From Mizuhopecten yessoensis (lineage: Eukaryota): a stretch of 64,000 bases of DNA. The notes beneath the pieces are model-generated. The model was not told the origin of the DNA, searched no databases, and saw nothing but the letters and a program-made list of their open reading frames with translations. The stretch covers positions 943,873 through 1,007,872 of the forward strand of contig NW_018408021.1 in assembly GCF_002113885.1 (NCBI RefSeq), given 5' to 3'. A program made the translations under genes and the position numbers. Positions 37,255-39,134 of this stretch are shown one piece after another (the first letter of the stretch is position 1; each line of letters starts with the position of its first letter).

Positions 37255-37713
37255 TCAGATATCTTATAAAGAACGAGATTTTAATTTGAGATGATAAACC
37301 CTCCCCCACAGCGCTCGGAACCTATCGATAACCGAGGGGGTCAGAGAGGATTTGATCGAAAATGGCAGCCGATGCGTATAGTTAAATATCAAATACATGT
37401 AGTTTATTTTACAGTCAAATAGGAAAATTCACAATCATTAAGTTTTTAATCAAATTTAGTATGAGCCGATCAGGTTGTAAAAAAAGTATTATATTGTTTG
37501 TGTATAAAAAAATCAGGTCTTGAGTCCATATACGCAAGATGGATACATGTACATGTCAGCAGAATGACTGTACTAAACGATATTTCGTACGTCGCAGAAT
37601 ATCGGACAACTTGGTATAAAAAAACTTCATTTACCAATATTCGATAACTCTAAATAATGGAACCATAATATAAAGTTTTGTGTAATGCCGTTGACAATAC
37701 ACATCTGTGTGTG

Positions 37714-37903
37714 TATTCCGTCTTTGCGTATTGCAGAGTTATCTTCTCTTGAGAGCAGGTATTGATTGTTACGTCATTGGTTTGTGTGAGAAAATTACGT
37801 CGTTTTCTCAAAAATTGATGACCTTACTCTCAAAAACAAATGACGTAACAATCAATAACTGCTCTCAAGAGCAGATAACTCTGCAATACGCAAAGACGGA
37901 ATA
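37714..37903. mobile_element. MITE family A copy
   Basis: Same terminal inverted repeats and body as 4311..4500. Confidence 0.85.
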
Positions 37904-38072
37904 GATGGTCTACATTTTACATTAACATTTACTGAATGTAAATATCTAATTTCTGCATTTTCATTTTTGTTTTTTGAATCTGCAATTTTGCTTTATCATG
38001 TTGTCATTTGATGATTAAGAATGAAAATGAAAAAGGCGCCACGTGACAAGAGATGGTAGCGGTTTAAATTCG

Positions 38073-38450
38073 TGTAGCGGAACTGGACTGGGTCGATCGT
38101 CGGCGACCAGATTGCTTTATTGGTAGAGCGTCCGTCTAGAGTTCGGAGGGTCCCGGGTTCGAACCCAGGTCTGGCCGTGCATTTTTCCTTTCCTGTAACA
38201 GTGGTGCCTGTGACCAGCCCTTGTTTCAAGCATTTGGTGTATGCTTGACAAGGGGATACCCGAACCTGGGTTGTAAATAGTTGAGTCTTCGGGGGCAAAG
38301 ACTTAGAAAAAGGAGGGAGGAATGTAGCGGAACTGGACTGGATCGATCGTCGACGACAAGATAGCTAAATTGGTAGAGCGTCCGTCTAGAGTTGGGAGGG
38401 TTCCGGGTTCAAACCCAAGTCTGGCTGTGCATTTTTCCTCTCCTGTTACA
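38073..38450 (+). mobile_element. Complete TRIM (miniature non-autonomous LTR retrotransposon) with tRNA-containing LTRs, Helenus-type
   Basis: Two 128-bp direct repeats 38073..38200 and 38323..38450 (TGTA...ACA; 13 differences), PBS TGGTGCC(T)GTGACCAG at 38202..38217, PPT AGAAAAAGGAGGGAGGAA at 38305..38322, flanks TTCG/TTGG. Confidence 0.88.
38105..38177 (+). pseudogene. tRNA-like sequence inside the 5' LTR (anticodon position AGA, short variable loop); second copy at 38355..38427
   Basis: 73 nt that fit canonical numbering: G18G19, T33, T54T55C56G57A58; single mismatches in the acceptor, anticodon and T stems; T5 run at 38182..38186. Confidence 0.75.
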
Positions 38451-39134
38451 TTGGTATACCTAATACAATCGGCTAACGTCCACTTTAACATTACATACCG
38501 TGATATACCGTAACACATATAGTCATTATGATACGAATTAAACCATGGTCCATGCTACATTGCATAGGGATACATGTACATGTCTATTCCATTGAATTAT
38601 ATAATGTTCCAGCGGTTTTCAATACCAAATTGAACCTCTGTGTGCGATGCACTATCGTCTAAAATATTAATGCTTATTCTAAAACTATTATCAGGTGGTA
38701 ACCCTATTTTATTCAATGAATCAAAAAGTATACAATATAATTTTATTAAGCGTTCGCCTCTAGGTAGCACCTATTTCATATTATTAATTGTTTGTGTTGT
38801 TATAATTACCTAGTCATTAATACGGTAATATTACTTTTAAATGACATGTTTACTATTGTGCAAATGTTGATGACACACGATTTATGTCTGTTCTGAGGTT
38901 AAGAGATCGCGATTATTTTGGTACTATGGAGTAGAAAGATACACGAATCAGACAAACATATGTGTACTAAATTACTTTCAAGATTGGCTGATTGGCATGA
39001 ATTACTGGATGAATGATTCTTGCATTCAAAGCTATGATACTAGATGAATTGTACTGTTTTTTGTTATGTCATGCTAGGAGGTTTGGTACATATTTTCTAT
39101 TTATCAGGTTTCCAACTTTTAATACATTTACATA

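What the first reader, a model, noticed from the sequence alone, without database searches (positions are those of the whole stretch)
38073..38450. Complete 378-bp miniature LTR retroelement whose LTRs each contain a whole tRNA-like Pol III unit
Seen: two 128-bp LTRs (about 90% identical, TGTA...ACA ends), a PBS directly after the 5' LTR, an 18-nt purine tract directly before the 3' LTR, a 122-bp non-coding interior and 4-bp flanks TTCG/TTGG. Each LTR holds a 73-nt tRNA cloverleaf with A and B boxes. Knowledge: the PBS equals the complement of the invertebrate tRNA-His 3' end (TGGTGCCGTGACCAG) with one inserted T. The layout parallels plant Cassandra TRIMs (5S in the LTR) and, as I recall, the recently named Helenus TRIMs. 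Inference: an LTR/SINE hybrid with an internal Pol III promoter, mobilised in trans by a tRNA-His-primed LTR retrotransposon. It would usually be mis-annotated as two tRNA pseudogenes.
Basis: partly seen in the sequence, partly recalled or inferred. Interest (0 to 1): 0.85.

Follow-up and report, generated by a model that had tools for sequence, protein, structure and literature searches.

The report
Old Helenus tRNA-LTR mini-retrotransposon copy
This 378-base stretch is a worn-out copy of Helenus, a tiny non-coding LTR retrotransposon with a tRNA-like unit in each terminal repeat that was described in scallops and oysters in 2024. It is an ordinary member of a known class, and its only new detail is a second conserved match to its primer tRNA.

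Summary
There are two 128-nt LTRs (13 mismatches, TG..CA ends), a tRNA-His-type PBS with one extra T, an 18-nt purine tract, a 122-nt non-coding interior and flanks TTCG/TTGG.

It is a Helenus TRIM (Kojima 2024, PMC10886601), reported from pectinid scallops with 4-bp TSDs and His/Lys primers. This scan has also met Helenus on other DNA of this genome (s1-507916 and others).

Genome-wide I find hundreds of copies with the same LTR-PBS-PPT-LTR layout, tandem arrays and solo LTRs. Of 33 intact-ended copies, 17 have perfect 4-bp TSDs (1.4% by chance).

The 128/122/128 family is not among the four families listed for Mizuhopecten yessoensis. Its LTR also carries a second, younger family with a tRNA-Lys PBS.

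This copy is old (LTR K2P 0.11). It sits inside a larger repeat whose other copies point to an original TSD of TTGG. It is not detectably transcribed as a unit.

One thing the Helenus paper does not mention: a 12-nt box in the interior is the exact complement of the T-arm region of the genome's own tRNA-His. It recurs in all 15 other His-primed bivalve Helenus families I read, which suggests a two-part primer site.

Pol III use and the autonomous partner remain untested.

The parts
38069..38072 (+). left target-site duplication, now TTCG (probably TTGG originally)
   Evidence: Other copies of the same host repeat read TTGG, CTGG, TCGG or TTGA here, and the right side reads TTGG in 9 of the 10 copies read (TTAG in L095).
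38073..38200 (+). 5' LTR, 128 nt, TG..CA
   Evidence: Full-length LTR matches elsewhere in the genome.
38104..38178 (+). tRNA-like unit of the 5' LTR. The A box is mutated; the B box GGTTCGAACC is intact.
   Evidence: ARAGORN calls tRNA-Ser(aga). Rfam tRNA scores 37.7 bits against a cut-off of 29.
38182..38186 (+). T5 run four bases after the tRNA-like unit. It looks like a Pol III terminator and is the putative R/U5 border.
   Evidence: Read from the sequence. 67 of 86 LTR copies have a run of T5 or longer, and 79 of 86 have T4 or longer. T4-T6 sits at the same place in related published LTRs.
38202..38217 (+). primer-binding site: complement of the tRNA-His 3' end with one inserted T
   Evidence: The inserted T is present in most of the 35 type A interiors. 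No uninterrupted form occurs in any sequence I held.
38218..38254 (+). hairpin 1, directly after the PBS
   Evidence: Fold. Other His-type Helenus families have a hairpin at the same place with a different sequence.
38261..38273 (+). box CGAACCTGGGTTG: exact complement of tRNA-His gene positions 44-56 (end of the variable loop, 5' strand of the T stem, start of the T loop)
   Evidence: tRNA-His gene sequence. The box is the only such site in the window. It is present, exactly or with 1-3 changes, in the 15 published His-type bivalve families I read.
38281..38306 (+). hairpin 2, before the purine tract. This part is shared with the Lys-primed sister family.
   Evidence: Fold. The homology covers interior positions 82-122 against the type B interiors.
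38305..38322 (+). polypurine tract, 18 nt, ending in GGAGGGAGGAA
   Evidence: The same tract ends most of the type A interiors and 11 of the 15 full-length type B interiors read; the rest differ by 1-2 bases.
38323..38450 (+). 3' LTR, 128 nt. Its tRNA-like unit (38355-38427) is decayed. The T5 run is at 38432-38436.
   Evidence: Rfam tRNA reaches only 20.6 bits.
38451..38454 (+). right target-site duplication, TTGG
37370..38790 (.). larger host repeat that carries this Helenus copy as a passenger. The limits are approximate.
   Evidence: Both flanks are shared with L020/21, L025, L080 and L094, the left flank alone with L059/84 and L090. The right flank gives 89 first-look candidates. All 6 further copies checked have the LTR next to it, as a full element, a solo LTR or a deletion form.

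Best explanation
This is an old, dead copy of a Helenus-type TRIM, a non-autonomous LTR retrotransposon of 378 nt. Each LTR contains a tRNA-derived unit with A and B boxes followed by a T run.

Shown here: the family was inserted by an integrase that makes 4-bp target duplications, and it forms full copies, tandem arrays and solo LTRs. Its primer site matches the genome's tRNA-His with a one-base bulge. The same 128-nt LTR also carries a second, younger family primed by tRNA-Lys.

Inferred: reverse transcriptase and integrase come in trans from a Gypsy-type element primed by tRNA-His. The tRNA-like unit serves as an internal Pol III promoter. The transcript would start near LTR position 32 and end at the T run near position 112. 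That gives U3 of about 31 nt, R of about 80 nt and U5 of about 14 nt, and it requires read-through of the T run in the 5' LTR.

This particular copy did not insert here on its own. It lies inside a larger repeat of about 1.4 kb that was copied together with it.
For: Anatomy.

Family size: 4148, 1450 and 3578 first-look candidates for the element, the interior and the LTR. There are 430 LTR/His-PBS junctions and 197 LTR/Lys-PBS junctions at up to 3 mismatches in 29 nt.

Architecture in 64 non-redundant places: full copies, arrays of 3-5 LTRs and solo LTRs.

TSDs: 17 of 33 perfect and 9 of 33 with 3/4, against 1.4% and 9.6% in mismatched-pair controls.

Primer: the PBS is family-wide, and there are 14 identical tRNA-His genes.

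Literature: Helenus in Pectinidae, including M. yessoensis, has 4-bp TSDs, His/Lys primers and Gypsy partners (PMC10886601). The LTR is homologous to Helenus-2_PeMa, -1_ArIr, -1_SaGl and -2C_CGi. A Helenus-4_MiYe 29-mer occurs 116 times in this genome.

Age: LTR-LTR K2P is 0.110 for this copy, and the type A median is 0.124.

Host repeat.
Against: No transcript start or end was seen. RNA-seq reads on the element are 90-95% alike, come equally from both strands, mostly run on into unrelated sequence, and are absent from this locus's flanks. They therefore come from other copies carried in host transcripts.

A conserved T5 run lies inside the 5' LTR upstream of the PBS. Most Pol III transcripts should stop there before reaching the PBS.

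The family is not in the published list for this species, and I could not check Repbase or Dfam.
Confidence: 0.9

Rival explanations
1. The layout is the same, but the RNA that is reverse transcribed comes from Pol II or from read-through of host transcripts. The tRNA-like unit with its T run then yields only a short tRNA-like RNA of about 80 nt, or serves another role such as packaging, processing or chromatin effects.
For: A T run of 5 or more sits 4 nt after the tRNA-like unit in 67 of 86 LTRs. It would stop Pol III before the PBS. RNA reads enter the LTR from many different flanks and on both strands, and none pile up at the tRNA start. Several published Helenus families lack such a T run, so the layout is not uniform across the class.
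Against: The A and B boxes are conserved across Helenus lineages. For the 5S counterpart Cassandra, the Helenus paper states that transcription starts in the 5S sequence of the 5' LTR and ends in that of the 3' LTR (PMC10886601). Element lengths fit Pol III limits. Random-primed RNA-seq is poor at showing small Pol III RNAs or exact ends.
Confidence: 0.3
2. It is a locus-specific tandem duplication of the head of an ordinary tRNA-derived SINE, or simply two tRNA pseudogenes.
For: ARAGORN calls a tRNA-Ser gene in the 5' repeat. The flanking 4-mers differ by one base.
Against: Hundreds of dispersed copies share the same ends, PBS, purine tract and spacing. 4-bp TSDs are enriched more than 30-fold. 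Solo LTRs carry their own TSDs.
Confidence: 0.01
3. This copy is an independent Helenus integration at this site, not a passenger in a larger repeat.
For: It has complete ends and near-matching 4-bp flanks.
Against: The same left and right flanks surround Helenus LTRs at many other loci. All 6 extra copies of the right flank that I read have the LTR beside it, some as solo LTRs or deletion forms. No empty site was seen.
Confidence: 0.08

Closest known systems
Helenus-2C_CGi, Helenus-2_CGi (Crassostrea gigas) and Helenus-1_SaGl (Saccostrea glomerata), Kojima 2024
   Same: The LTR is homologous (..CCAGATAGCTCAGTTGGTAGAGC.., B box, T run, CTCC..GTTACA end). The PBS is of the tRNA-His type and continues as GACCAACCC. 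The interior order is PBS, hairpin, GA(A/G)CCTGGG(T/G)TG box, hairpin, then a purine tract ending in GGAGGGAGGAA or GGGGGGAGGAA. TSDs are 4 bp.
   Different: Those families come from another order (oysters). They have no extra T in the PBS. Their LTR and interior lengths differ (interiors of about 100 nt against 122). The hairpin 1 sequence is unrelated. I compared them by eye only, because the published sequences have no reference that the tools can read.
Helenus-2_PeMa (Pecten maximus) and Helenus-1_ArIr (Argopecten irradians)
   Same: The LTR is nearly the same: 129-130 nt, roughly 85% identical by eye. The last 40 nt or so of the interior, including the purine tract, are also shared.
   Different: They carry a tRNA-Lys PBS (TGGCGCCCAAC) and a 90-93-nt interior without the His box. 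Their true counterpart here is the 344-nt 'type B' family, not the window's element.
Helenus-1 to -4_MiYe, the families listed for Mizuhopecten yessoensis
   Same: Same class and same genome: a 29-mer of Helenus-4_MiYe occurs 116 times here. Helenus-2_MiYe and -4_MiYe share the His-type PBS and the exact GAACCTGGGTTG box.
   Different: Their LTRs are 151-159 nt with unrelated 5' parts, and the totals are 405-425 nt. The 128/122/128 family is not in that list.
Cassandra (plant TRIM with 5S rRNA in the LTR)
   Same: It is a miniature LTR element whose LTRs hold a Pol III-type small-RNA gene with promoter and terminator. Tandem LTR-interior-LTR arrays occur here; that Cassandra forms them too is from my own knowledge, and the Helenus paper reports such arrays only for LTR-11_DR.
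   Different: It uses 5S rather than tRNA, occurs in plants, and is an independent origin. Only for Cassandra does the Helenus paper state that Pol III transcripts were validated.
Two-part primer sites of Ty1 and Ty3, and the T-arm contacts of avian and human retroviruses
   Same: Besides the 3' end of the primer tRNA, a second template segment is complementary to the T arm. For Ty3, a Gypsy-group element, see PMC5371799. The retroviral cases are from my own knowledge.
   Different: Here the second segment is only predicted from sequence. It lies 44 nt after the PBS across a hairpin, not about 4.8 kb away in U3. The primer is tRNA-His, not the initiator tRNA-Met.

Membership tests
Helenus (TRIM with tRNA-derived LTRs; Kojima 2024) | Short non-coding element with two LTRs in direct orientation and TG..CA ends | tested here: met
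   Layout 128 + 122 + 128 nt. The same layout is found in dozens of copies.
Helenus (TRIM with tRNA-derived LTRs; Kojima 2024) | tRNA-like sequence with A and B boxes inside the LTR | tested here: met
   ARAGORN and Rfam detect it in the 5' LTR. ARAGORN finds a tRNA in 44 of 86 LTR copies, mostly Ser(aga). The unit in the 3' LTR of this copy is below threshold.
Helenus (TRIM with tRNA-derived LTRs; Kojima 2024) | PBS complementary to a tRNA 3' end just after the 5' LTR, and a PPT just before the 3' LTR | tested here: met
   The PBS was compared with the genome's own tRNA-His genes. It has a one-base bulge, as in several published His-type families. The PPT is 18 purines.
Helenus (TRIM with tRNA-derived LTRs; Kojima 2024) | 4-bp target-site duplications in animals | tested here: met
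   17 of 33 perfect and 9 of 33 with 3/4, against 1.4% and 9.6% in controls. This copy has 3/4.
Helenus (TRIM with tRNA-derived LTRs; Kojima 2024) | Sequence homology to named Helenus families | tested here: met
   By eye against the paper's supplementary consensus sequences. No alignment was computed because those sequences have no reference.
Helenus (TRIM with tRNA-derived LTRs; Kojima 2024) | Mobilised in trans by an autonomous Gypsy element with the same primer | not tested
None was found in the 64-kb window or in the 95 loci I held.
TRIMp3 (TRIMs driven by a Pol III promoter) | Transcription by RNA polymerase III from the small-RNA unit in the LTR | tested here: inconclusive
   RNA-seq shows no pile-up of starts or ends and equal coverage of both strands, and the reads come from other copies. 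The library type is unsuited to small Pol III RNAs.
tRNA-derived SINE | Single tRNA-related head, a body, and a LINE-type or A-rich tail, with variable-length TSDs made by a LINE | tested here: not met
   The unit is a terminal repeat with a PBS and PPT between the two copies and fixed 4-bp TSDs. There is no tail.

The most novel reading that the evidence does not exclude
His-primed bivalve Helenus elements, and by implication their unknown Gypsy partners, may use a two-part primer site.

The classical PBS pairs with the last 14-15 nt of tRNA-His. A conserved 12-13-nt box (GAACCTGGGTTG, 38262-38273), placed one hairpin further on, pairs with the variable-loop end, the 5' strand of the T stem and the start of the T loop. 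Together they match 28 of the last 33 nt of the mature tRNA and leave out only four bases, three of the T loop and the first of the T stem's 3' strand.

The box is exact in six other published scallop families and differs by 1-3 bases in nine published oyster, pearl-oyster and scallop families, while the hairpin before it has changed sequence completely.

If real, the box is a primer-selection or primer-unfolding signal of the Ty1/Ty3 kind. It would also be a handle for finding the autonomous partner.
Probability: 0.4. Interest if true: 0.5.

Novelty: new member of a known kind. Interest (0 to 1): 0.3.

Why it matters
The class is published, so the finding mainly confirms that a reader without tools can recognise a Helenus element. 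Three points add a little.

(1) The scallop genome holds at least two abundant Helenus families (378 nt His-primed, 344 nt Lys-primed) that share one LTR and are absent from the published list. This matters for repeat and tRNA annotation, because ARAGORN calls many of these LTRs tRNA-Ser genes.

(2) One LTR with two different primer sites is a clean natural case of primer switching by exchange of the inner part.

(3) The conserved second match to tRNA-His gives a testable idea about how these tiny elements, and the Gypsy elements they parasitise, choose and unfold their primer.

Tried and rejected
(a) A tRNA that fits the PBS with its extra T perfectly. A genome-wide pattern for a T loop followed by an acceptor end ..CACAGGCA gave one unrelated hit. 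The PBS is therefore a bulged tRNA-His site.

(b) An equivalent T-arm box in the Lys-primed sister family. Only a 6-nt match (ACCCAC) to the genome's tRNA-Lys(CTT) was found, 7-8 nt in the Pecten and Argopecten consensus sequences. It also forms part of a hairpin, so it is no better than chance and the result is inconclusive.

(c) The box pairing with the element's own tRNA-like T arm. The commonest intact form of that LTR stretch, GGTTCGAACCCCGGTC, gives no contiguous match on its 3' side. A 9-bp pairing with one G-U is possible to CCCGGGTTC, so this is not fully excluded.

(d) Conservation of the box among the dead copies. It is not higher than the rest of the interior (0.912 against 0.937), as expected for neutral decay, so this is uninformative.

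(e) Expression of this locus. The flanks have zero depth in the raw RNA run.

(f) Autonomous partner. No His-type PBS outside Helenus copies occurs in the sequence I held.

(g) The Rfam plant microRNA hits at 37721-37895 are sub-threshold hairpin matches to a MITE, not microRNA genes.

Comparisons with the paper's sequences are by eye.

Full report
**Observation.** The window holds two 128-nt direct repeats at 38073-38200 and 38323-38450. They differ by 13 substitutions and no gaps (89.8% identity), and each starts TGTA and ends ACA. Between them lie 122 nt without coding capacity.
- One base after the 5' repeat comes TGGTGCCTGTGACCAG (38202-38217).
- The last 18 nt before the 3' repeat are all purines.
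- The 4-mers outside are TTCG and TTGG.
- ARAGORN calls a tRNA-Ser(aga) at 38104-38178.
- Rfam's tRNA model gives 37.7 bits there (cut-off 29) but only 20.6 bits for the matching part of the 3' repeat.

So the description is accurate. The one caveat is that the second cloverleaf is decayed: its B box reads GGTTCAAACC. The A box of the first unit is also mutated.

**The family in this genome.**
- The 378-nt element gives 4148 first-look candidates. The scored matches are mostly full length at 84-90% identity.
- The interior alone gives 1450 candidates and the LTR alone 3578.
- I mapped LTR and interior on 89 fetched loci and removed duplicates, which left 64 places.
- Two families share the LTR. 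Type A, the window's kind, has a 122-nt interior (378 nt in all). Type B has an 88-nt interior (344 nt in all), and only its last ~41 nt are homologous to type A.
- Both types form tandem LTR-interior-LTR arrays: three and four LTRs for type A, five for type B. Solo LTRs also occur.
- Of 33 elements, arrays or solo LTRs with both ends intact, 17 have identical 4-mers on both sides and 9 more match at 3 of 4. Mismatched-pair controls give 1.4% and 9.6%.
- Two solo LTRs show a perfect 4-bp duplication once an extra A before the TG is allowed.
- Exact-pattern counts give 430 LTR-end/type A PBS junctions and 197 LTR-end/type B PBS junctions at up to 3 mismatches in 29 nt.

This excludes a local duplication or a pair of tRNA pseudogenes.

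**What is known.** Kojima 2024 (PMC10886601) named TRIMs with tRNA-derived LTRs Helenus.
- Animal Helenus have 4-bp TSDs. Bivalve families use primers that include tRNA-Lys and tRNA-His, and the likely partners are Gypsy elements.
- The window's genome has 987,588,634 bases in 82,659 contigs. It contains 116 near-exact copies of a 29-mer from Helenus-4_MiYe. From memory the assembly figures also fit M. yessoensis, so I take it to be that species or a very close relative.
- The paper's table lists four families for this species, with LTRs of 151-159 nt. Their sequences are unrelated in the 5' part of the LTR, so neither type A nor type B is listed.
- By eye, the window's LTR is about 85% identical to the LTRs of Helenus-2_PeMa and Helenus-1_ArIr. 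Those two carry a tRNA-Lys PBS and a 90-93-nt interior, so they are the counterparts of type B.
- The window's LTR together with its His-type interior matches the oyster families Helenus-2C_CGi, -2_CGi and -1_SaGl in order and partly in sequence.
- The His-primed form is therefore old, and one LTR lineage carries two different primer sites in scallops.
- Earlier notes of this scan had already met Helenus elsewhere in this genome.

**Primer site.** The genome has 14 identical tRNA-His(GTG) genes.
- The PBS is the complement of their last 12 nt plus CCA, with one extra T after TGGTGCC.
- That T is present in most of the 35 type A interiors read. No uninterrupted form exists in any sequence I held.
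- No tRNA-like gene end fits the bulged form.
- Published scallop His-type families have a similar one-base insertion nearby.
- Type B carries TGGCGCCCAACG, which fits the genome's tRNA-Lys(CTT).

**A second match to the primer.** Interior positions 61-73 (38261-38273, CGAACCTGGGTTG) are the exact reverse complement of positions 44-56 of the tRNA-His gene. Those positions cover the end of the variable loop, the 5' strand of the T stem and the first bases of the T loop.
- By my own arithmetic, a 12-nt exact match between the ~106 non-PBS bases and the ~56 remaining tRNA bases is expected about 2.5 x 10^-4 times.
- Exact box: Helenus-2_MiYe, -4_MiYe, -3_PeMa, -4_PeMa, -5_PeMa and -4_ArIr.
- One to three changes: Helenus-2_CGi, -2B_CGi, -2C_CGi, -1_SaGl, -2_SaGl, -1_CVi, -4_CVi, -2_PiIm and -4_PiIm.
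- In every case the box lies between a first hairpin, whose sequence differs completely between lineages, and a second hairpin before the purine tract.
- The PBS and the box together match 28 of the last 33 nt of the mature tRNA. They leave out four bases, three of the T loop and the first of the T stem's 3' strand.
- The paper does not mention this.
- Two-part primer sites are established for Ty1 and Ty3 (PMC5371799).

Against the idea:
- A box-like sequence also survives, in degenerate form, in an Ile-primed family, and as GAACCTGG in a Pro-primed family.
- The Lys-primed sister family shows only a 6-8-nt match.
- A weaker pairing with the element's own T arm is possible.

I rate functional pairing with tRNA-His at about 0.4.

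**Promoter and terminator.** The tRNA-like unit occupies LTR positions 32-106, and a T5 run follows at 110-114.
- 67 of 86 LTR copies have T5 or longer, and 79 have T4 or longer.
- Related published LTRs have T4-T6 at the same place, though several other Helenus families lack it.
- If Pol III starts at the tRNA-like unit and stops at the T run of the 3' LTR, then U3 is ~31 nt, R is ~80 nt and U5 is ~14 nt. The same T run in the 5' LTR would then have to be read through. This is an unresolved weakness of the Pol III model.
- In one raw RNA-seq run, 355 reads lie on the element. 311 of them are only 90-95% alike and 323 fit only in part. They split 176 to 179 between the strands and show no pile-up of starts or ends. 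The flanks of this locus have no reads.
- These reads come from other copies carried in host transcripts. They neither support nor exclude Pol III use.

**History of this copy.**
- Its two LTRs have a K2P distance of 0.110.
- Sixteen type A copies range from 0.094 to 0.222 (median 0.124). Eight type B copies range from 0.032 to 0.100 (median 0.066).
- Type A therefore looks extinct and type B younger.
- The flanks of the window's copy recur around Helenus LTRs at many other loci: about 700 nt on the left, with gaps, and about 335 nt on the right.
- In those copies the right 4-mer is TTGG in all but one (TTAG in L095). The left one reads TTGG, CTGG, TCGG, TTGA or, here, TTCG. The original duplication was therefore probably TTGG.
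- All six further copies read have the LTR next to the right flank: one as a full element, one as a solo LTR and four lacking the 5' LTR, of which at least three are deletion forms that join an upstream part of the host repeat to the purine tract.
- The element reached this locus as a passenger in a larger repeat.
- A 186-nt hairpin MITE with TA flanks (37717-37902) was later inserted in this copy only.

**Verdict.** I file it as a new member of a known kind. The modest extras are an unlisted family pair that shares one LTR, and a candidate second primer-binding box.

**Limits.**
- The tRNA gene sequences came from ordinary pattern searches.
- Published consensus sequences were compared by eye only.

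Noticed in passing
window 37717-37902: A 186-nt hairpin element with ~28-nt terminal inverted repeats (TTCCGTCTTTGCGTATTGCAG...) and TA on both sides. It is a Stowaway/mariner-like MITE. It is absent from another copy of the same host repeat (L025). It produces sub-threshold Rfam hits to plant microRNA families. RNA reads show the same MITE family inserted in another Helenus LTR.
   Followed up: partly
window ~37370-38790: An unclassified repeat of about 1.4 kb carries the Helenus copy. Its right flank has 89 first-look candidates. Other copies hold a full element, a solo LTR or deletion forms at the same site.
   Followed up: partly
G000:C588:104861-110772: The type A LTR-end/PBS junction recurs every ~52-54 bp for dozens of units.
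   Followed up: no
L067 (G000:C1665:54003-54992): A tandem array of five LTRs with four nearly identical 88-nt Lys-primed interiors. This is the sister family sharing the window's LTR, and it is not in the published list for this species.
   Followed up: partly
L065 and L086 (solo LTRs): There is one extra A before the TG of the LTR. With it the 4-bp duplication is perfect. This suggests an imprecise plus-strand primer end at ..GGAGGAA/TG.
   Followed up: no
window 38216-38298 (RNA joint): 16 RNA reads skip 81 nt of the interior (hairpin 1 and the box). This points to a shorter family variant elsewhere in the genome.
   Followed up: no
genome-wide: About 500 copies of GGTTCGAGTCACGTCACGGCA were found. 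This is another tRNA-derived repeat with a His-like acceptor end, probably a SINE.
   Followed up: no
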